Below, one piece after another: positions 3,117-48,446 of a stretch of 64,000 bases of DNA. The notes below the pieces were generated by a model. It did not search any database and had not been told where the DNA came from. It was given only the letters and a program-made list of their open reading frames with translations. Both the position numbers and the translations under genes were made by a program. The DNA is taken from NCBI GenBank assembly GCA_009103225.1, contig RHPI01002656.1:310001-374000 (forward strand). Direction: 5' to 3'. How positions within the stretch are numbered: position 1 is the stretch's first letter; each line of letters opens with the position of its first letter. The stretch is from Chlorokybus atmophyticus. Taxonomy: Eukaryota > Plantae > Mesostigma and Chlorokybus algae.

Positions 3117-4320
3117 ATGGCCACTGGAGCCGTGGACTTCAGCGCGGTGCGGCGCCAACAAGAAGTCACCTTGCCGGAGCTGTTCGGCGGGATTGGCAGC
3201 GGCTTGGCGGCTCTTCTTAACACCGGTGTCAAGGTAATACAGTATCACTACTGTGACCCTGATCCGCACGCTGTTCGCCATCATCTATGCCAGTTGCACT
3301 TGCGCTATCCACACCTCTTGCCGTTGTTTGCATTTCGTGGAAGTCTTAAGGCTCTGCCTCAAAACATCCGCTCCATCTCGGCTGATCATCTCATTGCCTT
3401 GGGCAATGTGGATCTGTTGATTGCTAAATGGGAGTGCCAGGGTCACTCCAGGGCCGGGACCGGACAGGGGTTAACGATCCACGCTTCACACTCTTTTGGG
3501 CATTGCTGCGAGTCATCCACCCTGCTGCAGCACCACCAGATTCAACACCCTCTGGTGTACGTTATCGACAATGTCCTCCGAGGATGATCGCCGCCATCAT
3601 GTGCAGCACAGCTACCGCGTCGTGTGCTCTATCCTTGGCCACCCGTCCAAGATAAACGCCGCACGCCGTGGGAGTGCCAGGGTCACTCTCGGGCCGGGAC
3701 CGGACAGGGGTGAACGATCCACGCTCCACACTCTTTTGGGCATTGCTGCGAGTCATCCACCCTGCTGCAGCACCACCAGATTCAACACCCTCTGGTGTAC
3801 GTTATCGACAATGTCCTCCGAGGATGATCGCCGCCATCATGTGCAGCACAGCTACCGCGTCGTGTGCTCTATCCTTGGCCACCCGTCCAAGATAAACGCC
3901 GCACTCCATGGGTTACGTGCACACCGCGTCCGTGCCAAGTGGACAAACCTCGCCGATGTGGAAGAGCTGACCACCGCTGAGCACCTCAGCTCGCATCACA
4001 AGAGATTGTGAATGACATCCTCGACATTAGCAGAGCGTCACAGCGAGTCTCTCGCCACGACCATGCGCACTTCCATTAATGCAATCAACCAGGAGAACCA
4101 CGTTGAGCTCTCCCCACGCCGGGTCTCATACCCGAGCTCGTATGCCTTCAGAGATGGCAGGGACGGCATGGTCTTCGACAGCAACACAGGCCGCCTGGAC
4201 GAACCCAATGCACGCGAGCGTGAACGCGCCATGAGGTTCTTCCCAGGCAGCATCACAGGCTGCTCAATGATAGATAATCAGCAAAGGCAACTCTTGGGAC
4301 GCGCCATGGACCAGAATAGC
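3117..4320 (+). pseudogene. C5 cytosine methyltransferase domain of copy 1 (frameshifted, internally duplicated)
   Basis: Motif I LPELFGGIGSG, motif IV LLIAKWECQGHS, motif VI YVIDNV, motif VIII RAHRVRAKWTNL, and EPNARERERAMRF and QLLGRAMD (motif X region). Confidence 0.9.
3429..3904 (+). repeat. 240-bp tandem duplication of the DNMT motif IV-VIII region
   Basis: 3429-3664 is nearly identical to 3669-3904. The ORF track shows the duplicated peptides at 3428..3655 and 3668..3895. Confidence 0.95.
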
Positions 4321-6319: not shown

Positions 6320-7629
6320 CATCTCTGCACTCCACACAGAGTTGGGACACTTACGTATCAAGCGCACCGTCAACTTGGTGAGTGCCCAGTACTAATGGCA
6401 TGGCATGCACACCCAAGTTCGCACCTTTGTTGCAAACTGCACGCATTGCGACCTGGTGCGTGCCAGCCTCAATACCCGCACTAGCACACTGCATCCACTG
6501 CCTATCGCCAGCATGTTCTACCGGTGGGGACTGAACATCCTTGAAGATCTAGCACGCTCAGCTCGTGGCAATAGATACATCCTCGTCATAAGCGAGCACT
6601 TTTTCAAATGGGTTAAGCTGGTCCCCCTTCCCAACAAAAGTAGTAGAGGAACCGCTCAGGCTTTCCTCGACCATGTGCTCAGTCGCTTCGGCTCATGCGC
6701 TGAAGTCATCATCGACCAAGGAGCGGAGTTCCGCGGCGAGTTCGACACTTTGCTTGATCGCTCTTACATCGACCATCGACGTACCTCATGCGACCATCCG
6801 CAGGCGGATGAGCTGGCGGAATGTACTATTCATACCATTGAAAAGGCCTTGCGCAAGTACGTCATCGACCACGAGAAGCGCACCTGGGATGACTACCTTC
6901 CCTGGATAGCACTAGGCTATCGGCTTTTCAAGCAAGCTTCCTTGCGCATGTACAGCCCGTATCAGCTGTTGTTTCGTAGGGAACCCTTACTCCCCTTCTG
7001 CGCACAAAGAAAAGTGGAACGCGTGTTGGACAACCTCGACAACCCTGTAACTATGCTGCACGACATGCAACAGCGCGCCTATCTTTTTACGCACGTCATT
7101 CCCATGGCCATGGGCAATCTTCATATTGCTCAGCACCGTGACACGCTGCGCTATGAACGCGTTCGCAGTGGATTCTATAAACACCGCAGTCGCCGCTTCG
7201 AAACGGGCGACTATGTCTTCCGCATGACCCAAACCAAGGACACTCTTGACATCAGTGTCAGACGCGTCGTCTACAAGGTCCAAAAGGTTTACCTTTTGGA
7301 CCTTGTAGATTTCAGAGGGGATTACAATCCCCTCTGAAATTCTGGGTTTACTCGGCAACGACGGCGAACGCCTCAATGACAACATGGAAAACTGTGCTTC
7401 ATGTCATCTGCCACACGTTGCAGGATTGGACGTCATTCAGCACCCTCGACCCAGTCGCAGCAAGTGTTGCGAGAAGTGCGGTGCCGCCGACGACGCACTT
7501 ATGATGCTGTGCAACGGTTGCAACAAAGGCATGCACTGCTATTAACTCGATCCGCCAAAAAATAATGTGCCTCTGGAGGCATACTGGTGTGAGGACTGCC
7601 GCGTCCGTGGTCCTCCTCATTCTCGATGA
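6320..7629 (+). pseudogene. integrase plus C-terminal PHD finger of copy 1
   Basis: HTELGH...CTHCD zinc finger and a DDE core (WGLNIL, IIDQG, LAEC). The PHD remnant CEKC...LCNGCNKGMHCY*...YWCEDC lies at ~7468-7600. Confidence 0.9.
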
Positions 7630-7665
7630 AGACTGCTCACTAAAGCAGAGATTTCCTTAGTACAC

Positions 7666-7924
7666 AGGGGGGCGGCTTGTTGACTTGCTCTTGTTAGCAT
7701 TGTCAGCAACGCATTTCATCACTCGGAGCACACAGCACTATGTCATATCACATGTTATTAGCATCACAGGTGTTTCCCCCACAAGAAGGTACAGGCAGGG
7801 GGGTATTCTTTGCCTTCCGCACTGTGCAGCACAACCGACAGTCCACAAGGCTGGCCTCATGCCCCATCATGGCAATACGGTTGGGAGCGACCTGGAGGGG
7901 CACACGTCCCTGCCAGGCCCGACA
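7666..7924 (+). other. PPT and 247-bp 3' terminal segment of copy 1
   Basis: AGGGGGGCGGCT|TGTTGA...GGCCCGACA. The same junction and the same terminal CCCGACA occur in copy 2. Confidence 0.85.
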
Positions 7925-8121
7925 ATAGCCACCAGTGTTGTTGTTGTTGTTGTTGTAGCCAATAGAGGGCCGCAGCTCGTGGAACTTGCGCCAGCATCCT
8001 GCCTCCGAATGTCCCATTTTGTGGCAGTTGTCGCACACATGTCGCATACAGGTTGCCACAATTTTGGTGCATTTCTTTTTAAAGTGCCCATGACGACCAC
8101 ACCGATGGCACAGCACCGGAG
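7925..8121 (-). pseudogene. gag zinc-knuckle fragment of copy 3, cut off by the insertions of copies 1 and 2
   Basis: PVLCHRCGRHGHFKKKC...CDNCHKMGHSEAGCWRKFHELRPSIGYNNNN is homologous to 10203-10387. It joins in register with 18376-18461 across the GGAG duplication. Confidence 0.92.
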
Positions 8122-8421
8122 TGTCATGCCTATCGCCCAAGCATGTTAGTCATCATCGGGCATGCCTACAGCGAGACCCTCGCCCGGCTTACCAGCTTGG
8201 CAACCCGCTGACCACTAGCTAGGTCATGTCTCTAGAGTAGCTCATGACCATAGCCTACATAGGCACCGCGCGTAGCTGTTCAGTTGTGAGTTTAGTTATA
8301 AGTCAGGTTCTATATCGAGTGGTAATTTCCTGTGGAAATAGCCTCGATATGACCGTTAGCTTATGTTCTGGACAGTCATGAGTTGACTTGTATAAGTAGG
8401 CACAGTGTTCACCGGATCAGC

Positions 8422-8437
8422 TGGTGACACTGTAAGT
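8422..8437 (+). other. PBS-like site TGGTGACACTGTAAGT, ~300 bp inside the 5' end
   Basis: It follows ...GGATCA+GC, like an LTR-end/PBS junction. Homologues occur at 21034-21049(-), 27698-27713(-) and 29308-29323(+). It is the exact reverse complement of 8711-8726. Confidence 0.6.
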
Positions 8438-8922
8438 AAAAAAGCTAAGAGCTTGTGAAGCGACTTGAACTACGAAACACACCGTCCTGGTTCCCAAGAA
8501 TCCCCTCACCGTGTGAGAGCCTGTGCATGTTCTTGTGCACTGTGCTTGTCCTCGCTGTGAGCTTTGTGTACTTGGTTGCGGTGTGCTTGTTGGCATCAGT
8601 CAGGGCATAGCATCCACGTGTTGCTCATTCACCTCACTTAACAGTGTAATTTCTCTTCCACTCACGCAAAGAACTGTGTAAACAGCACTACCTATCGTAG
8701 TGGCTTGTTGACTTACAGTGTCACCAACTTTGCTCAAGTGAGTGTAGTTGCAGGTTGTACATCAGCATCGCAATCTGTAGTTGTACACATCACAGTGCAG
8801 TGTTGTCACCGTCACCGCATAGCGCGCACAAGCGCTAGTGTTGGGTGATAGCAGCACTGGAGATCCCATTGTAGAGCACAAACACTCTACCCTTCATCCA
8901 CTTTCACCATCGCATCAGCTGT

Positions 8923-11900
8923 ATGAGCAGGCCCACCCCTTTCTCGCCAATAGAAGAAGGGGACCTCAACAACTGGAGCCCAACCTCCAACCTTACCTAT
9001 AAGCGCGCAAGTGAAGGGAGCGATTACCGTAGCAGCAGAGGCTCACGCCCCGTCTCCGGCTTCACCTCCTCTCACTCCACTCCTCGTCAACGAGCATCTC
9101 CACCACCGTCGGATAGTGACGACGAAGAGATGGAGCCTTCCAGCTCAACCAACTCCCTACGCTTCTCCGGACGCCCTGGCACCACCTCACTTGACGAGTT
9201 CATCATCAAGTTCCACTCCAAGATGCGGCAGCAAGCCCTCAAGAGCAAGGACTGGACAGACGAGGTATCGTTTCTTGTGTCCGCCCAATACCTTGATCAC
9301 GAAGCACATGATGTGTGGAAGTCCGTCGCTGAGTTGCACAAGATTGATGGCTATGGCGAGTTGGCCAGCACAATAGCCGCCACGTCACTGCACAGCCCAT
9401 CGGTTACGGTCCCTGTAGCACCGGCCCCGCCCGCCTCAGTCACGGATCTCACTCTAGCTGCAGCCATGGAGAAGGCAGAGAATGAAGAGGTTGAGGTGGT
9501 AGTGGCCTCATTGACTCCTGCAGAAATCGAGAGCAAGAAGGCCGAGCGCCGGATCAGAATACTCAACCGCACCGCTGCCATCATCAGGGAGCAACAAGAG
9601 GAGCAGCAAGCTGCAGCATTGGAGATGGGTACGCCCCTGCTACCAACACCGAACTCGCGTGCTCCAGCGGGAGCCAGTGTTTTCACCCTCGGCTCAGTGG
9701 CATTGCGTGCACGCGATTACGGTGGGCGCGGCCATGTCGGACTCCCCGTTGAAGGACCTCTACGCCGCACTCCGGCGCACCTTCCCACCTCAAACCAACA
9801 GCAAGGTGGAGGAGTTGAGGCGTTTTCGACGGAAGCCCCACGAGGACCCTCTCCGACTGTATTCACGGTTGGAAGGGTTGCTTAAAGACACTGACTACAA
9901 GATCGTCAGTGAGGAGGCGGCAGCATTGGTGTATGTGGCCGAGTTGGATCCCACCCTCGGTGAGTCAACGCGCTTGACGCTGAACTACAGCAGGCCCCTC
10001 GGCTACACCCTCAAGGAAGCTTTCGAGACTGCACAAGCCATCCATAAGCGTGCAGTGTATGCGAAAGCGGTGCTGGACACCAACCGCAGTGCCTCACGGC
10101 CTATGGCAGGCACAAGTGCAGAGCCTCTTCGGCGGGACCGCAGCCGAGAGCCGCAAGGCATCCACCACAAGGATAAACGGTCAGCTCATGCTGCCCTTGT
10201 GGCTCCAGTGCTGTGCCACCGGTGTGGTCGACCCGGCCACTACCAAAAAGAGTGCACCGAAGATTACGGCAACCTTGTGTGCGACCACTGCCACAAGACG
10301 GTACACTTGGAGACAGTATGCTGGCTCAAGTTCCCTGAGCTGCGGCCCACTATTGGCTACAACAACGGCAACAACGCTGTTGGCTACCGCGGCAACAACA
10401 ACAACAACAACAACGGGGGCTACAACAACAGCAACCACGCTGGCGGCTACAACAACAGCAACAACGCTGGTGGTCGCAACAACAGCAACAACGCTGGTGG
10501 CCACAACCCCAACAACAACAACAACGCTGGCGCCCGCAAGGAAGAAGCTGGCTATAGAGGGAAAAACCGCCCTCCACAGCACAAAGAGCTTGAGGGACGT
10601 CCTTGCGCTGGAGCTGCTGCTGTAAAGGCACCAACCAATCCACCGGCTATTGACCAAGTGGCAGCCCTGATGGCGCGCGTGGCACAGCTGGAGGAGAACA
10701 AGGAGCAGGACTATCAAGCCTGCTATGCTGCTAGGTGGGCACTGATGGCACCGAAACGGGATAGGGACACTCCCACGCCGTCGCGCGTACAACCATCCAG
10801 ACGTGCGCGCAGGGAAGCTGGCGCGTCGTCAACAGCGGCATCGTCGGACGCCACAAGTGGTGCTGCCTCGGCAGCCACAACCACCGCTGGGACGACGCCG
10901 TCGACGACACCGTCGGCGTCCACACCGACCACGACAGCAGGTGTCAGCACTCTTGGCACCACGCTGTCCCCGGTGATGAAGAGCACCCACGCCGCAACAA
11001 CCATGGTCGTTGGGTTCGTAAGTGGTGAATCCACCACTCCTGCCTCCATCGAAGCGACCACATCAACCGCAACTGCTGCCACCCTCACAGCCGTCACCTC
11101 AGTAACGACGACTGCTGCAGGTGCCACCACCATCGCCCCCAGTAGTGTTGCCATACCCACTGCACCACTTCCTGAGGGACGAACGGCACCGCCACCAGCG
11201 TTGGACGTCACACAGCAAGTGCCACGCGGGCCACAAGCAGAGCGCACCTGGGCGTCGAATCTACGCAACGTGGAACCCACCACCATTGCGTACGGACCAG
11301 GGGGGCAACGCACCACGCGCGTGGCACGCGATGATCGCATCTTGCCCCTACCACCTCCAGAGTACCACACGCTGCCGGAACCCACACAACAACAGCTGGA
11401 GGATGAAATCCTCGCCGGCACTGCACCAGAGATGAGGGATCGTCTGTTCGGGGTCACCTACCGACGACCTGCGGTATTGGAGCTGGCCATCCAGTTGTTC
11501 CTGGCGTTACACGCACAAGTGCAGAGCGCACCTAGTCAAACGCAGCAACCCATGCCCGCTCAACAGATCGACTTCGAGCCCTCACCACTGGACCCACTCG
11601 GCCTCCAGCGGCACAAAATGCAAGACCTCGTGGTCACCATGTCTGACATCGCGCTGGGCACTGATCCCGCTCTCCGGGGGCTCACTCCAGGCAGTCGTCA
11701 GGAGCGTTTTTTTGCACTCGAACAGGCCCATCGTTATCAAATGGACCAAGCTGCCCAAGTGGACGCGCGCCGACAAGCGTACGAAGCAGCACACGCCGTT
11801 ATCGTACCGACCGTAGCGCCAGCAAATGTGGCCAACGCCTCTACGGCGCTGACCACAGCGTACTCCACGGCAATCGCCATCGAGCAGCCAGGACACGCAA

Positions 11901-25939: not shown

Positions 25940-28032
25940 AGGGATTGCGGGATCGACTGGGGTCTGGAGCAGAAGCAGGAGCACGTGAGGGACCAGAGTT
26001 CATATCCAACACGGCTCTCGTCCACACCTTGCGGTCGTGGATGGCCTGGGCTGTTAAAAAGGCTTGAAGCAACGAATACCCTTATGGTCGGGTATTTTTG
26101 AGAGCGTTGTCCACTGTACTATTTAGTGGAGGCTCCAATTGGCTGACGAACACCACGGCGGCAGCTTCGTCGCTGAGGATCTTGTTGTTAGTGTCCTTCA
26201 GCAGCTTAACCATACGGGTGTAAATGCGCAGTGGGTCCTTCCCTGCTTTGCGCCAAAAGTGTCCCAACTCCTCCACCTTCTGACTGGTCTATGGTGGGAA
26301 TGTGCGCCGAAGTGCCAGATACAAATCCTGCAGGGGTGACAATGTACGGTTTACCCTGACGGTGAGGGCGGGATCTCGTATGCTGACTGAGCCTGAAGAC
26401 AGTGTACTGACTGCAGCCGTGTCTTGGGTTCCCTGAGTCCTTGTGTGGATTGGAGTGTCAGGTATGACGACGCGTTGTCGTGCTTGTGCTTCCTCAAGTG
26501 CAGCTTGTTGCTCTGCCATTAGCCTGAACGCCAACACTTGCACCTAGAACCGGCGTGCTTGTTGCGCTGCTGCCAACTCGCGGTCGACCAATGCAGGATC
26601 AATTGCTGGCATATCTGCTTCAGCTCTCAACTGCGCTGCGGCCAAAGCTTCCGTTAGGGTAGGGCCTTGCAGTGGGGCAGCTGGACCAATGGGCGTGACA
26701 GGGACGCCAGGAGTTGATGCCTCCATGAGGAGAGCTTTGGTGCCGGCCAGAACTCCGTACCCTCCAATCTCATGCTGTGCATCAACTAACCTATACACCT
26801 CATGTGCCTCGAGATCTAAGCAAGTTGCAGCCATGCGAAAAGACGTTACATTTGACCAGTTGGGAGTTTTTATCGCATGGTAGCTCATCCTGCAATTGAA
26901 ATTGATGATCCATTCGTCCAGTGGTGTTGTGCCAAGATGTCCGGAGAAGGTGAGACCATGAGTGGAACCGGATGCCTCCATGTCGTCGTAGTCGAGCTGA
27001 TCGATGAAGCCTTTAACGTGATGACGAGACCGTATATGGCTGAAGTCGCTGGTGGTCTCCTCGGCCATAGGGGAAAGCCCATAACGATGAGTGAACTCTC
27101 TGACTGGTGTAGACTCACTCATGCAAGTCGCACGGTGAGCGCAGGAGAGAGTGAGGCAGAGTGTGTGTGCTCTACTGGTGCTCCCCCAATGCTACCACCC
27201 AACACATTAGTGCTTGTAAATGCACTATGTGCTGGCAATGATCACACAACACTTATGCAACCAACGCTGTTGCCAGCATGCAAGCCACGCTGATGCACGA
27301 CACTCACTTGTACAAGGAGGATGACACTGTAAGTCAACAAGCCACTACTACAAGTAGTGCTGCTTGTATAGTGCCTTGAATGAGGTCCAGATAATTCCAC
27401 TGTTAAGTGAGGTGTATGAATGCGGCAACACGTGGACCCACAGTCTGATGCGGACTACACAACGTGCACCCACACAGTCTGATGCGGACTACACAACGTG
27501 CACCCACACAACCACAATCACATTAAGTGACAAGCAATGCACGTGTGCATACACTGCATTCTCTTATGTGTAGATGTGTCTTGGCAACCGGGGCGGCGAG
27601 GTGATGCCGTCACATCAAGCCACAACAACTCAGAGCAAGTCCCGAGCACTCCGAAGATCAACATCCGTACTTCTCAATTCCAAGTCTTTCAGTTCTCATT
27701 TACAGTGTCATCAACGTACAGAGACTAAGTTCTAAGCCTTTATAATCAGGTGACAACCGTGCAGTCCAAAGATAACGGCTAGTTTACGAAATGGCGAAAT
27801 GGTAGATTAAGCGTAAGTCAAACTCGCAACGGATCAGCTAGTACGGCTGGTACTAGGTACCTACAAAGACTGACTAACAACTGTTTCGTGTTGCGGGACT
27901 CATGCCAATAGCCGGGGTCGGTGTCTGGCTGTAGGCTGATCAAGAGGGTTACTGATGCTGATAGCACGGGAACGATGCCTGGCTGTAAGCATCAACGAGG
28001 AAGTTGGCCCCTCTTGGACCGCTGGCATGACA
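25940..28032 (-). mobile_element. copy 4 (minus strand): 5' end, leader and N-terminal gag of a more divergent subfamily
   Basis: The 5' end TGTCATGCC is at 28032. ORFs 26544..27122, 26289..26543 and 26082..26276 give TTPLDEWII, LQDLYLALRRTFPP and LSDEAAAVVFV. The leader motifs are conserved. Confidence 0.88.
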
Positions 28033-28967: not shown

Positions 28968-29410
28968 TGTCATGCCAAATACATTCGCATGCCAATCCTC
29001 CTCGAGCATGCCTACATCTAGCCCCAAGCCCGGGCTACCAGAATAAAGACCGCGTGCGACCCAGCCTACTGCTAGCTACTTCGTACTTCATGTAGCATGT
29101 AGCTAGGGCTACTTTATAGACCTCTCTGTAGAAACCGCGCGTAGCTGATCAGTTAGGAATCTGTTATTAATTCATGTGCTACATCGAGTCTTAGGGGATT
29201 TTCATAGTATCATATGGCCTCAATGTGACCGTTGGCCTAGTGCCCGCGTGGCATTGCACAGTCATGATTTGACATATGTAAGTAGGAAGTCATGTCACTA
29301 GACTCACTGGTGACACTTTGAGTGAGTACTAAGAGTAAAGACTCTGACTTTAAGAGCTTGTGAAGCGACTTGAATGAAAGCACACCGTTCCGGTTGCCAA
29401 GACCACCGCT
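28968..29410 (+). mobile_element. copy 6: truncated 5' end and leader inserted into the gag of copy 5
   Basis: It starts TGTCATGCC, then shows GAGCATGCCTACA, CAGTCATGATTTGAC, TGGTGACAC and AAGAGCTTGTGAAGCGACTTGAA blocks shared with 8150-8500. Confidence 0.85.
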
Positions 29411-41185: not shown

Positions 41186-41518
41186 TGTAACGGAGTGCTA
41201 CCGCTATGTGGTTTGAGACCCTTACTTAGTTAGAAATAAGGGTCCCAACGGGTAATAAACAGCCAATTGAGTCGTATTAGGGCCTTGATGGCCTTAATGT
41301 AGTGTAGCTTATCGCTAACGCTGTTATCGATGTGAGACTCATGTCTCACATCGATATCAGCCGCATGGCGCTGCTAACGCAGCGGCCGCCATAGCTAGAG
41401 GATCTTTTGCTCTGGCAGCTGCCCTGGCAGCGGCGGCGGCGGTGTGGGCCGGCGGTGTGGCTTATGGTGGTGTTGGGGTAGGGGATTCAAGGGGGCGGTA
41501 GCACCTCCCCCTCTTACA
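41186..41518 (+). repeat. 5' LTR of the chromovirus
   Basis: Roughly 90% identical (by eye) to 46736-47079. Confidence 0.95.
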
Positions 41519-41520
41519 TT

Positions 41521-41532
41521 TGGTATCGGAGC
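41521..41532 (+). other. primer-binding site, tRNA-iMet
   Basis: TGGTATCGGAGC, one mismatch from the canonical TGGTATCAGAGC, 2 nt after the LTR end. Confidence 0.9.
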
Positions 41533-42427
41533 AGGGGCGTGAAGGGCTGTGGGGGCGGCGGCGGCAGCTCTGGCGGTGGCAGGAGCAGCGGCAGCGAGTG
41601 ACGGCAGCAGCCGGCGGCACTGAGCAGTGCCAGGCGGCAGCACTAGCAGCCGCTACCCACGAGTTTGATTGGGTAGTGGTAGTTGTTAGTGTTGTTGTTG
41701 TTGTTGTTGTTGTTGTCGCTGCTGCTGGTGTAGCATAGCCTTGCTTGCTTATTTGCTTGCTTGCTTACTAGCTTAGCCTAGCCTAGCCTAGCTGCCCTGG
41801 CCTAGCCTTGCTTGTTAGTTTATAGGGAGGCGGCCACTTAGGCTGCCTCACCTGAAGTATTGCATCCCAGCACATCACTTGTAATCAATTATCATATTAT
41901 TACTTGTGAGCGTGCTCGTGGTTGGGGCTGCCACCGCGTGGATTCGTGGTGGTGTAAGGGGGGGTTGTGATTGTTTACACTTCTCCCACCCTAATGAAGT
42001 AGTCTAACGCCAACTTGGGCTGTTTTAGCCGCCATTCAGTGCGGTGGGGCCGCCAGATGCATTCTAAGCGATCGATATCAAACTTTCGACTCACAACTTG
42101 TCGATTTCAGCCTGTAGGGTTGATTCAACGAGAGTTTGGCACCTTTTGTGTCATTTGCAATTGTGAGTTGAGCTGAGTTGTACAAAGTGAAAACTTTAAA
42201 TTGCTATAGTTTGTGAACCGTCGCGTGGATTTGCGTACGATTTGTTTCCAAGGGAGCATCTTGTTGAGAGGTGTTGGGCAGTCATTTAACGTGCTGTTTA
42301 ACCCAAGTATAGCACCTTGAAATCAGCAAGGAAGAAACCATAAGTTTCAGCACTTTTTGAGTGCAGAACTAGTGTGGTTGTGCACTTGAACACTTCATTT
42401 ACTTACGACTTCATTCTTGGACAGATG

Positions 42428-46609
<4,182 letters not shown>

Positions 46610-46735
46610 TAAAAGGGTGCTGGCAGACATCTTTACCGCTTCGGCCCTGGTTCTCCTTCCCCTCAGGTTTTCAATGCTTATGGTAGGGCCTTGCTAGCCC
46701 TTTAATGAGGATATTAAAACTTAAGTGGGGGGGAA

Positions 46736-47079
46736 TGTAACGGAGTGCTACCGCTATGCGGTACCCCGTCCTTACTTAGTTAGAAATAAGGGTCCCAACG
46801 GGTAATAAACAGCCAATTAAGCCGTATTAGGGCCTTTATGGCCTTCTGTAGTGTTAGCTTATCGCTAACACTGATATCGATGTGAGACTCGTGTGTGAGA
46901 CACGAGTCTCACATCGATATCAGCCGCATGGCGGCTAACGCAGCAGCCGCCATAGCCAGAGGATTCTTTGCTCTGGCAGCTGCCCCGGCAGCGGCGGCGA
47001 CGGTGTGGGCCGGCAGCGTGGCTGGTGGTGGTGTTGGGGTAGGGGATCAAAGGGGGCGGTAGCACCTTCCCCTCTTACA
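46736..47079 (+). repeat. 3' LTR of the chromovirus
   Basis: It follows the PPT AAGTGGGGGGGAA and ends CTCTTACA before the TSD GTCGT. Confidence 0.95.
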
Positions 47080-48446
47080 GTCGTGGTGGTGGCCACTAGC
47101 CTGCACCGGGTTGAACCCGGAGCAATGCACACGGCCGTAGTCGCGCTCTTAAATAGTTACGCCATGAGCCCGCTGCAGTGCATAGGCAATCCGCTGACTA
47201 TATGACTACATGGGCACGAAACCTGACATATGAGTGGTATGCAATCCAAATACAGAACCACACGGCGCGCGCAGGCGGTGATGAGCTCGCGGAAAGACGC
47301 TCTCTCCATGTCTCTGCCGCCAGGGGATGAACTTGTCGCCTGACGCGTGGTCATTATGCTTCCGACTCTTGGCCAACTCAAACGCACGTGGTCTTCTCTT
47401 AAGCTAGGCGCTGCAGGTGACAATGGTGTCGACTGATAGTGGGCGGTCGTGGCCTGACTCGAAGGCCACATTTTACTGCAGTATTGTTGATGCGAAATTA
47501 TTGTGCACAACCACAAAGTGCTTACAATATACGTCATGCTACTTTGCGTCATATGATGATATGTAATGTTTAACCATCGATCATAAATAGCATTTGTCGC
47601 ACATATGGTACGATATTGCATTCTATAAATGCACATATTACAATGAGCAATAATTTGTGGCTTACACCTTACCAATATAGTTTTGATGATGTGGTAATAT
47701 TGCTTGTCGCGGCTGACGCTGTCATAGCGTCAGCCTTGACGATTGGGAAGATTGTTAACAATCTTCCCAATGAACGAGCACACTTTGCTCATGACATCGT
47801 TATGAGCAATTCAGCAAACCAAAGGGTTGTATGCCGTTATAACCTATTATGAGCTTGATTATAACAATAATGACTACATTGGTTGAAGAAATCTGAACAT
47901 AATAACCATACATTATATATGAGTATGACTGTTGTATAGTACAACATGTGCCATATATTTCACAATATCACTTATGACCCTGGGCCATTGGCCCATCAGT
48001 TATGGGCTTATCATAGTCTAGAGTGATGGCCACCACGGCCATCATCATGCAACGGGAACCCTTTCCCAAGGTTGCGTGCCCGCGGCACGGTGCGCGCGTC
48101 TTGATCATAGGCCCTTTTGCGGCGCGCACAGAGCTACGCGCTCCGCAGCCGCGCCCGGGCATCCCGCAGCAAGCAACTCTCCTCTAACAACGGCAGCCAT
48201 CGCCAACCAGCAAGAGATCAACACTTTTCTCTCTGTGAGCGTCCTAATCAAGCACGCATACAAGACAGCTGCGGAAAAGCTGCCGTTGTCCACGTGGAAC
48301 GCTAGGGTTTTAAGGGCGACGGCGGCGGGGCGGGCGGCGGCCGCGGCTGGGCAGGGGGCGTGGACGGGGCTTGCGGTTGGCTAGGGAGGGCGGGCGGGGT
48401 TGGGTGGCGAGACGAGGGCGGGTGGGTGGAGAAACGTGGGTGCGAG

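What the first reader, a model, noticed from the sequence alone, without database searches (positions are those of the whole stretch)
8422..8726. 16-nt leader inverted repeat that co-varies in three divergent copies (possible self-priming or copying signal)
Seen: copy 2 has TGGTGACACTGTAAGT (8422-8437) and its exact complement ACTTACAGTGTCACCA (8711-8726). In copy 3 (minus; 21034-21049 and 20731-20746) the A becomes G in one arm and the T becomes C in the other. In copy 4 (minus; 27698-27713 and 27319-27334) TGG becomes TGA in one arm and CC becomes TC in the other. These are two independent compensatory changes, while the ~270-360 nt spacer diverges. The copy 4 change destroys the TGG a tRNA CCA end would need. 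Established: Tf1-type elements self-prime from an intramolecular duplex, and DIRS elements use internal complementary repeats. Inference: the pair base-pairs in the RNA, or one arm is templated from the other during reverse transcription. The downstream arm ends in CCA, like a tRNA 3' end.
Basis: partly seen in the sequence, partly recalled or inferred. Interest (0 to 1): 0.86.

Follow-up and report, generated by a model that had tools for sequence, protein, structure and literature searches.

The report
Self-primer and primer site of retrotransposon
A 16-base inverted repeat in the leader of a methyltransferase-carrying Ty3/gypsy retrotransposon of a green alga is real, keeps its pairing through matched changes in three diverged copies, and most likely is a Tf1-style self-primer plus primer-binding site, a known way to start reverse transcription, here sitting in an element with unusual, permuted ends.

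Summary
Arm 1 (8422-8437) and arm 2 (8711-8726) are exact complements. Copies 3 and 4 each carry one change compensated on both sides, at different pairs. Chance gives this in about 0.5-1.3% of simulations. The arms are 81-94% conserved while the spacer is 52-78%.

The repeat lies in copy 2 (8122-18375) of a gag-PR-DNMT-RT-RH-INT-PHD Ty3/gypsy element of the published KnitGypsy-Dnmt3 type. A TATA-like box sits exactly 31 nt before arm 1 in all four copies. Arm 2 directly follows a 12-mer that also follows the polypurine tract.

Best reading (about 0.55): arm 1 is the 5' end of the genomic RNA and folds back on arm 2, the primer-binding site, as in Tf1/sushi, Tcn1 and TAR elements. Re-copying of the site from the primer would explain the matched changes. 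No transcript-start data, host tRNA set or larger alignment could be obtained.

The CCA end of arm 2 is not conserved (CCA, CCC, TCC).

The setting is odd. Integrated copies have TG..CA ends and a target-site duplication (TSD) but no LTRs. The two ends joined (..GACA-GC-TGTC..) occur in read contigs and distant relatives.

Other windows of this genome were noted with similar compensated repeats (unchecked).

The priming signal is a new member of a known kind. Interest is moderate.

The parts
8422..8437 (+). Arm 1. Proposed 5' end of the genomic RNA and self-primer.
   Evidence: It is the exact complement of 8711-8726. A TATA-like box lies exactly 31 nt upstream in 4 of 4 copies. Conservation stops at its 3' edge.
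8711..8726 (+). Arm 2. Proposed primer-binding site.
   Evidence: All 16 positions pair with arm 1. Together with the 12-mer before it, it is the best conserved block of the leader (90-93% between copies). It pairs with arm 1 in the MFE and consensus folds.
8391..8396 (+). TATA-like box (TATAAG).
   Evidence: The offset to arm 1 is the same 31 nt in copies 2, 3, 4 and 5b (TATAAG / TATAGG / TATAAA / TGTAAG). This holds even in copy 4, where the sequence in between is unrelated.
8700..8711 (+). 12-mer 'b' (GTGGCTTGTTGA), fused to arm 2. It is a copy of the sequence that follows the polypurine tract.
   Evidence: The same 11-12-mer occurs at 18132-18143 and at 7674-7683 (copy 1), right after the G-runs. 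It also occurs before arm 2 in copies 3 and 4. In the consensus fold it pairs with AACAGCACTAC just upstream.
8122..8421 (+). 5' terminal segment 'B' of the integrated element. It starts TGTCATGCC and holds the promoter-like box.
   Evidence: The same start borders unrelated flanks at 21350(-), 28032(-) and 28968(+). It is not repeated at the 3' end.
18120..18132 (+). Polypurine tract (GAGCCCAGGGGGGG type).
   Evidence: Read from the sequence. Copy 1 has the equivalent at 7665-7673.
18133..18375 (+). 3' terminal segment 'A'. It starts with the 12-mer b and ends CCCGACA.
   Evidence: Copy 1 ends with the same CCCGACA at 7924. A target-site duplication GGAG lies at 8118-8121 and 18376-18379, inside the gag of the older inverted copy 3.
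8923..18087 (+). Coding part: gag with CCHC, an unknown region, protease, C5 DNA methyltransferase, RT, RNase H, integrase and PHD finger. It has a few frame breaks.
   Evidence: Pfam hits.
20731..21049 (-). Arm 1, spacer and arm 2 of copy 3.
27319..27713 (-). Arm 1, spacer and arm 2 of copy 4.
29308..29323 (+). Arm 1 of the truncated copy 5b.

Best explanation
The two arms are the self-primer and the primer-binding site (PBS) of a Ty3/gypsy-type retrotransposon.

Proposed steps:
1. Transcription starts at or next to the first base of arm 1, about 31 nt after a TATA-like box.
2. The RNA 5' end folds back over about 270-360 nt and pairs with arm 2.
3. RNase H cuts after the duplex, and the 3' end of arm 1 primes minus-strand DNA.
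4. As in Tf1, plus-strand strong-stop DNA copies the primer. The PBS of each new copy is therefore rewritten from arm 1. This produces matched changes in both arms without a long wait for a second mutation.

The unit that reverse transcription treats as an LTR runs from the polypurine tract to arm 2: b-A-GC-B-arm1-leader-b. The integrase cuts at an internal palindrome (GACA|GC|TGTC). An integrated single copy therefore reads B...A and has no LTRs.

Shown: the pairing, the covariation, the conserved spacing to the TATA box, the boundaries and the end-to-end junction.
Inferred: the transcript start, the cleavage, the priming and the re-templating.
For: - Exact 16-bp complement in the youngest copy. 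Pairing is retained in copies 3 and 4 (15 and 14 of 16), with one double-sided change each at different pairs.
- The chance of two or more compensations is 0.006-0.013.
- The arms are 81-94% conserved while the spacer and flanks are 52-78%.
- A TATA-like box lies exactly 31 nt before arm 1 in 4 of 4 copies, although the sequence between them is unrelated in copy 4.
- Arm 2 directly abuts a 12-mer identical to the first bases after the polypurine tract. The stretch from tract to arm 2 is therefore bounded like an LTR.
- Copy 4 has TGA, not TGG, with the matching change in arm 2. The universal tRNA CCA end cannot explain this.
- All folds close the leader with this stem.
- The joined ends A-GC-B occur as one contig in run X2. 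Its depth of 59.7 is like or above that of the element interior, 33-51.
- The same GACAGCTGTC palindrome lies downstream of the PHD ORF in distant relatives L003 and L004/L005.
- L005 shows ...A-GC-B(587 nt)-A'. That is, A follows a B as long as B+arm1+leader here. This fits a right LTR boundary at arm 2 rather than at arm 1.
- Self-priming is established for Tf1 and predicted for Tj1, the Tf1/sushi group and the plant Tcn1 and TAR lineages (PMC4600332, PMC6317226).
Against: - There are no transcript-start data. The runs found were assembler contigs without direction.
- Only three arm pairs were available, and no further copies could be fetched.
- No host tRNA set was available.
- Arm 1 begins TGG in 3 of 4 copies. 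It lies where a tRNA-type PBS would lie if the LTR-like unit ended at 8421.
- A single integrated copy cannot give an RNA with a terminal repeat if transcription starts at arm 1. The model therefore needs other master copies (the split-repeat form), which are not in this window.
- No convincing equivalent arms were found in the distant relative L003.
- The mismatches in copies 3 and 4 could be decay, but so in principle could the matched changes.
Confidence: 0.55

Rival explanations
1. The stem is a structural element of the 5' UTR that closes the leader domain. It would serve packaging, dimerisation, translation control or RNA stability. Reverse transcription would be primed by something else.
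For: The stem closes a roughly 300-400 nt domain in all folds. Covariation shows only that pairing is selected or re-templated. It does not show priming.
Against: This reading does not explain three things: why arm 1 sits exactly 31 nt after the TATA-like box, why arm 2 abuts the copy of the post-polypurine-tract 12-mer, and why no other PBS candidate is seen between the 5' end and gag.
Confidence: 0.2
2. Arm 1 is an ordinary tRNA-type primer-binding site that follows an LTR-like unit (polypurine tract to 8421). Arm 2 is a tRNA-3'-end mimic that masks or regulates it, or itself serves as primer after cleavage.
For: Arm 1 starts TGG in 3 of 4 copies, and arm 2 ends CCA in copy 2. The joined ends A-GC-B make a 545-nt unit between the tract and arm 1.
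Against: - Arm 2 ends CCC and TCC in copies 3 and 4. Copy 4 has TGA in arm 1 with the matching change in arm 2, whereas tRNA CCA is invariant.
- A TATA box 31 nt before a PBS would leave no R-U5.
- There is no conserved CA at the supposed LTR end.
- A canonical LTR element in the same window uses an iMet-like PBS TGGTATCGGAGC, which is unlike arm 1.
- A tRNA matching all 16 nt would need A at position 61, where C is nearly universal (textbook knowledge).
Confidence: 0.12
3. The arms act as a bridging or template-switch signal of a DIRS-like replication cycle. They would bring distant parts of the RNA or cDNA together to rebuild the permuted ends, and would not initiate synthesis.
For: The family has DIRS-like split repeats according to PMC5890265 (Fig. 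4c legend) and L005. The integrated copy lacks LTRs.
Against: Neither arm is complementary to the element's termini or to the end-to-end junction. The element has a DDE integrase, a TSD and TG..CA ends, and no tyrosine recombinase.
Confidence: 0.08
4. Chance: an old inverted repeat with no function, whose matched changes arose by random decay of dead copies.
For: Copies 3 and 4 are degraded, and each also has uncompensated changes in the arms.
Against: The probability is 0.006-0.013 for the two compensations alone. The arms are far better conserved than their surroundings. A perfect 16-mer inverted repeat within 800 nt is expected about 7e-5 times.
Confidence: 0.05

Closest known systems
Tf1/Tf2 and Tj1 of fission yeasts, the Tf1/sushi group, and the plant Tcn1 (Ty3/gypsy) and TAR (Ty1/copia) lineages: self-primed reverse transcription (PMC4600332; PMC6317226)
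   Same: A short stretch at the proposed 5' end of the element's own RNA is complementary to a site downstream, at the PBS position. There is no evident tRNA match. A hairpin lies next to the PBS, like the U5-IR stem described for Tf1.
   Different: - The duplex is longer (14-16 bp against 11 in Tf1).
- There is no canonical LTR before the PBS in integrated copies.
- The LTR-like unit begins and ends with the same 12-mer.
- The integrase carries a PHD finger instead of a chromodomain.
- Clade membership was not tested.
KnitGypsy-Dnmt3 of Klebsormidium nitens (de Mendoza et al. 2018, PMC5890265)
   Same: A Gypsy-type element with a Dnmt3-like C5 methyltransferase inside pol. Its repeat structure is described there as DIRS-like, not as plain LTRs. 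The host is a green alga.
   Different: That paper does not mention a PBS, a polypurine tract, self-priming, the palindromic junction or LTR-less monomers. The identity of this window's organism with K. nitens was not verified.
DIRS / Ngaro / PAT split direct repeats, and the DIRS-1 internal complementary region
   Same: The ends are not simple LTRs. An internal copy of the joined ends (A-GC-B) is present in the split-repeat form (L005). A circular or end-joined intermediate is implied.
   Different: The element has a DDE integrase, a 4-5 bp TSD and TG..CA ends instead of a tyrosine recombinase without a TSD. The inverted repeat studied here is not complementary to the termini.
Retroviral 2-LTR circle junction palindromes cleaved by integrase (PFV, HIV-1 in vitro; from my own knowledge, not checked here)
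   Same: A palindrome ...CA-NN-TG... at joined ends. Cutting it gives ends that can be integrated.
   Different: Here the palindrome would be the regular integration substrate. It lies inside the reverse-transcription LTR unit.
Hepadnaviral and caulimoviral replication (short terminal redundancy r, and DR1/DR2 11-mers; from my own knowledge)
   Same: An 11-12-nt direct repeat lies at the two priming landmarks. It could mediate circularisation or a template switch.
   Different: This element has an integrase and gag and is a genomic transposon. No role of the 12-mer has been shown.

Membership tests
Self-primed LTR retrotransposons (Tf1 type) | PBS complementary to the element's own upstream RNA sequence | tested here: met
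   16/16, 15/16 (including one G-U) and 14/16 pairs in copies 2, 3 and 4.
Self-primed LTR retrotransposons (Tf1 type) | The complementary stretch is the very 5' end of the transcript (start of R) | tested here: inconclusive
   A TATA-like box lies exactly 31 nt upstream in 4 of 4 copies. No RNA end data were available (one search gave contigs only).
Self-primed LTR retrotransposons (Tf1 type) | PBS directly follows the 5' LTR (end of U5) | tested here: inconclusive
   No duplicated LTR exists in this copy. Arm 2 does directly follow a 12-mer identical to the first bases after the polypurine tract. The tract-to-arm-2 unit therefore has LTR-like boundaries.
Self-primed LTR retrotransposons (Tf1 type) | No host tRNA 3' end matches the PBS | not testable with these tools
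   There are no tRNA genes in the window and no host tRNA set. The only indirect evidence is the TGA/TCA co-change at the CCA position in copy 4.
Self-primed LTR retrotransposons (Tf1 type) | RNase H cleavage of the RNA duplex releases the primer | not testable with these tools
   This needs biochemistry or cDNA end mapping.
Self-primed LTR retrotransposons (Tf1 type) | RT/IN phylogeny within the Tf1/sushi-Tcn1 clade | not tested
   No reference set was at hand. The integrase ends in a PHD finger, not a chromodomain.
Canonical LTR retrotransposon (Ty3/gypsy) | gag, PR, RT, RNase H and DDE integrase in this order | tested here: met
   Pfam: zf-CCHC, Asp_protease_2, RVT_1, RT_RNaseH, Integrase_H2C2 and rve, plus an inserted DNA_methylase and a PHD finger.
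Canonical LTR retrotransposon (Ty3/gypsy) | Two long terminal direct repeats | tested here: not met
   The only direct matches between 8122-8930 and 17800-18375 are a 12-mer and a 15-mer.
Canonical LTR retrotransposon (Ty3/gypsy) | TG..CA ends and a short target-site duplication | tested here: met
   The ends read TGTCATGCC...CCCGACA. GGAG lies on both sides, within the interrupted gag of copy 3.
DIRS-order retrotransposons | Tyrosine recombinase instead of DDE integrase, and no TSD | tested here: not met
   An rve integrase and a TSD are present. There is no Phage_integrase hit.
DIRS-order retrotransposons | Split direct repeats or an internal copy of the joined termini | tested here: inconclusive
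   Absent from all copies in this window. Present in the distant relative L005. Reported for the family in PMC5890265 and in unchecked notes on other windows.

The most novel reading that the evidence does not exclude
The inverted repeat is the priming module of a Ty3/gypsy lineage whose reverse-transcription LTR (polypurine tract to self-primed PBS, bounded by the same 12-mer at both ends) is circularly permuted relative to the integrase ends. The cDNA would close on itself through the 12-mer. The DDE integrase would open it at an internal GACA|GC|TGTC palindrome. Cutting a one-unit circle gives LTR-less monomers that cannot replicate further. Cutting a two-unit circle once gives replication-competent split-repeat copies. 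This would be a hybrid of LTR-retrotransposon, DIRS and pararetrovirus logic.
Probability: 0.35. Interest if true: 0.75.

Novelty: new member of a known kind. Interest (0 to 1): 0.5.

Why it matters
If arm 1 and arm 2 are a self-primer and its binding site, tRNA-independent priming extends to a streptophyte-alga Ty3/gypsy lineage that carries its own DNA methyltransferase and a PHD-finger integrase.

It would also fix the right boundary of the unit that reverse transcriptase duplicates. That boundary is the key to understanding why integrated copies of this family have integrase-type ends and target duplications but no LTRs.

The priming signal alone is an expected variation on Tf1/Tcn1 biology. 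The combination with permuted ends is what a transposon specialist would find unusual. The repeat architecture itself was already noted in print (PMC5890265).

Tried and rejected
Attempts to obtain more copies for a real covariation test all failed:
- gag ORF protein search: no hits.
- gag ORF against 1.8 billion representatives: one weak hit, not on record.
- gag-X ORF: no hits.
- PR-DNMT ORF: only two distant hits. L001 lacks the leader.
- Exact-protein look-up of the window's gag: not on record.
- DNA patterns in viral, metagenome and genome collections: 0 hits.

The metagenome protein scan gave only distant relatives (L002-L005). They were useful for the palindrome and the split-repeat form but not for the arms.
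- The 12-bp inverted repeat in L003 (5192/5425) is not used in its MFE fold and lacks the neighbouring landmarks, so I do not count it.
- A TGGTGAC... motif in L003's 71-nt tandem repeats has no complement downstream.

Readings rejected:
- The 305-bp segment as an LTR or a MITE with terminal inverted repeats. It is not repeated at the 3' end, and its arms co-vary.
- The short repeat ACAGCGNGACCCTCG (8168 / 18343) as an R region. An LTR built on it would lack the conserved first 46 nt of the element (reasoning).
- Copies 2 and 3 as a 2.8-kb inverted terminal repeat of one element. The TSD shows that copy 2 is an insertion into copy 3.

Other dead ends:
- The 881-bp unit 18462-19342 is not related to the LTR pair at 41-47 kb.
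- No tRNA or Rfam family lies in the window.
- I did not run the count of structure pairs, because it needs a long typed structure string. RNAalifold pair counts and a script were used instead.

Full report
**Observation**

The 16-mer TGGTGACACTGTAAGT at 8422-8437 has its exact reverse complement at 8711-8726. With up to three mismatches the motif occurs seven times in the window, against 0.78 expected. None of 100 shuffles reached seven. The hits are arm pairs of three copies plus a lone arm 1 of a fourth, truncated copy at 29308-29323.

- Copy 3 (minus strand) has TGGTGACACTGTGAGT / ACTCACAGTGTTACCC.
- Copy 4 (minus strand) has TGATGACACTGTAAAT / ACTTACAGTGTCATCC.
- Pair 13 changed A-T to G-C in copy 3. 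Pair 3 changed G-C to A-T in copy 4.
- In addition, copy 3 has one G-U and a mismatch at pair 1. Copy 4 has mismatches at pairs 1 and 15.
- Spacers are 273, 287 and 363 nt.

A simulation that drops the observed numbers of substitutions at random gives two or more compensations in 0.6-1.3% of trials. Between copies the arms, and the 12-mer before arm 2, are 81-94% identical. The spacer and the 5' segment are 52-78% identical. Single-sequence folds of all three copies and the RNAalifold consensus close the leader with this stem. The consensus has 15 pairs, two with changes on both sides.

The statistical support is real but rests on three copies.

**What the repeat sits in**

Self-comparison of the window and Pfam show a 10.25-kb element at 8122-18375. 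It encodes:

- gag with a CCHC knuckle
- an unassigned region of about 800 aa
- an aspartic protease
- a C5 DNA methyltransferase
- RT and RNase H
- a DDE integrase
- a PHD finger

This is the architecture published as KnitGypsy-Dnmt3 of the charophyte Klebsormidium nitens (PMC5890265).

The element is inserted into the gag of an older, inverted copy (copy 3), which occupies 7926-8121 and 18376-21350. The two flanks are contiguous in copy-2 coordinates and share GGAG at 8118-8121 and 18376-18379. The ends read TGTCATGCC...CCCGACA.

The same 5' start borders unrelated DNA at 21350(-), 28032(-) and 28968(+). The same 3' end closes copy 1 at 7924.

There are no LTRs. The only direct matches between the first 800 nt and the last 575 nt are a 15-mer and a 12-mer.

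**Landmarks around the arms**

1. A TATA-like box (TATAAG, TATAGG, TATAAA, TGTAAG) lies exactly 31 nt before arm 1 in all four copies. This includes copy 4, whose intervening sequence is unrelated. That spacing is typical of a TATA box and its start site, so arm 1 is probably the first stretch of the RNA.
2. Arm 2 is fused to GTGGCTTGTTGA. The same 11-12-mer follows the G-rich polypurine tract at 18133-18143 and, in copy 1, at 7674-7683. The stretch from the tract to arm 2 is thus bounded the way reverse transcription bounds an LTR: the first base after the plus-strand primer, and the last base before the minus-strand primer site.
3. In the consensus fold the 12-mer pairs with AACAGCACTAC just upstream. 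This makes a hairpin beside the putative PBS, reminiscent of the U5-IR stem required by Tf1 (cited in PMC4600332).

**The ends joined**

Laying Logan contigs of four public runs on 7300-10400 gave no direction or end information. One 115-nt contig of run X2 (depth 59.7; interior pieces 33-51) has, directly before 8122, the letters ...GTGACCCTCGACTCCCCTCGACCCGACAGC. That is the last 28 nt of the element's 3' end (one mismatch) plus GC. The junction ...GACA-GC-TGTC... is a 10-nt palindrome.

The palindrome is absent from the window. It recurs about 190-350 nt after the PHD ORF in three metagenome contigs of distant relatives (35-36% identity in the DNMT part): L003, L004 and L005.

- L003 runs from pol through the palindrome into a long gag-like ORF.
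- L005 and L004 (one locus) read ...G-run, A (about 60 nt, ending GTGACA), GC, B (587 nt, starting TGTCAC), A' (an 86% copy of A), then flank. This is a split-direct-repeat end.
- It agrees with the legend of Fig. [quoted passage not shown]
- It also agrees with unchecked notes on other windows of this genome, which describe both A-ORF-B-A-B copies and LTR-less monomers.

Contigs of X1 and X2 that follow the window to 8713 and then continue with A-like sequence may be the leader-12-mer-A junction of such copies. I could not see how much of the leader they cover, so this is only a hint.

An assembler can also join pol to gag through a collapsed repeat. These contigs therefore show the A-GC-B junction. 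They do not show a circle.

**Mechanism I think most likely (about 0.55)**

Arm 1 is the 5' end of the genomic RNA and arm 2 is the primer-binding site. The RNA folds back, RNase H cuts after the duplex, and arm 1 primes minus-strand synthesis, as shown for Tf1. The same mechanism is predicted for Tj1, the Tf1/sushi group and the plant Tcn1 and TAR lineages, and for 12% of surveyed plant elements (PMC4600332, PMC6317226).

Because plus-strand strong-stop DNA copies the primer, the PBS of progeny is rewritten from arm 1. This yields matched changes in both arms. It also fits the perfect 16/16 duplex of the least decayed copy against the 14-15/16 of the older ones.

The unit duplicated by reverse transcription would be 12-mer, A, GC, B, arm 1, leader, 12-mer (about 830 nt). 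The integrase would act at the internal palindrome. That gives integrated monomers B...A without LTRs, or split-repeat copies when a second unit is retained.

A monomer transcribed from arm 1 lacks B and any 3' repeat, so it should be a dead end. The masters would be the split-repeat copies. The conserved 12-mer at both ends of the unit may act as a short terminal redundancy for closing or extending the cDNA.

These last steps are inference. None of them is demonstrated.

**Rivals**

- A purely structural stem (0.2). It does not explain the fixed TATA distance or the junction with the 12-mer.
- Arm 1 as a tRNA-type PBS, with arm 2 as a tRNA mimic (0.12). Several points argue against it:
  - Arm 2 ends CCA only in copy 2 (CCC and TCC elsewhere).
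  - Copy 4 changed the base opposite the invariant C75, together with its partner.
  - No conserved CA ends the supposed LTR.
  - A TATA box would sit inside U5.
  - A canonical LTR element in the same window (41.2-47.1 kb) uses an iMet-like PBS, TGGTATCGGAGC.
  - However, no host tRNA set was available.
- A DIRS-like bridging role (0.08). The arms are not complementary to the termini, and the enzyme is a DDE integrase.
- Chance decay (0.05). The simulation and the conservation contrast argue against it.

**Comparison and novelty**

As a working principle this is Tf1-type self-priming. Membership in that clade was not tested, and two defining features remain open: the transcript start, and a PBS abutting an LTR.

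The element family and its DIRS-like repeats are published. That paper does not mention a PBS, a polypurine tract, self-priming or the palindrome, and I found no other paper on it.

I rate the priming signal as a new member of a known kind. The permuted-end replication scheme is the more unusual possibility: probability about 0.35, interest 0.75 if true.

Two earlier notes of this scan report similar compensated repeats in other copies of this genome. I could not check them, and they are not independent evidence.

**Limits**

- No reads with direction were available.
- No step had to be referred.

Noticed in passing
window 7924/7926, 8121/8122 and 28032/28033: Three family members (copies 1, 2 and 4) are inserted antisense within about 260 bp of the same part of gag in older copies. 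This is the CCHC knuckle / Asn-repeat region, equivalent to 10205, 10386 and about 10467 of copy 2. It may reflect a target preference, possibly linked to the PHD-finger integrase.
   Followed up: partly
window 18462-19342: An 881-bp unit with TG..CA ends and a clean 5-bp TSD (GGCTC) lies inside copy 3's gag. Its first 12 nt (TGTCATGCCTAT) equal the 5' end of copy 2. Nothing else matches the family or the LTR pair at 41-47 kb. It could be a solo LTR of another family or a non-autonomous passenger of the same integrase.
   Followed up: partly
window 41190-47080: A canonical 5.5-kb LTR element. Its LTRs start TGTAACGG and end CTCTTACA, and are 91-96% alike. It has a G-rich polypurine tract and an iMet-like PBS, TGGTATCGGAGC. 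It contrasts with the element studied here.
   Followed up: partly
window 8168-8196 and 18343-18375: A short direct repeat, ACAGCG(A/T)GACCCTCG..CCCG, lies 46 nt inside the 5' end and at the very 3' end of copy 2. In the joined form the att region would therefore be partly duplicated with a period of about 81 nt. Its function is unknown.
   Followed up: partly
L003 2-4732: A distant relative has the DNA methyltransferase between RNase H and integrase, not between protease and RT. It still has the PHD finger and the GACAGCTGTC palindrome. The methyltransferase has either moved or was acquired twice.
   Followed up: no
window 3429-3908: A 240-bp tandem duplication (98% identical) lies inside the methyltransferase region of copy 1.
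   Followed up: no
window 10300-12748: An open reading frame of about 800 aa lies between the gag knuckle and the protease. It has no Pfam match and no homologue in any protein search. It is G+C rich with a strong A-over-T skew.
   Followed up: partly
window 54174-63052: A host gene with many tandem repeats of about 570-630 nt encoding a conserved GAGTDA-type motif.
   Followed up: no
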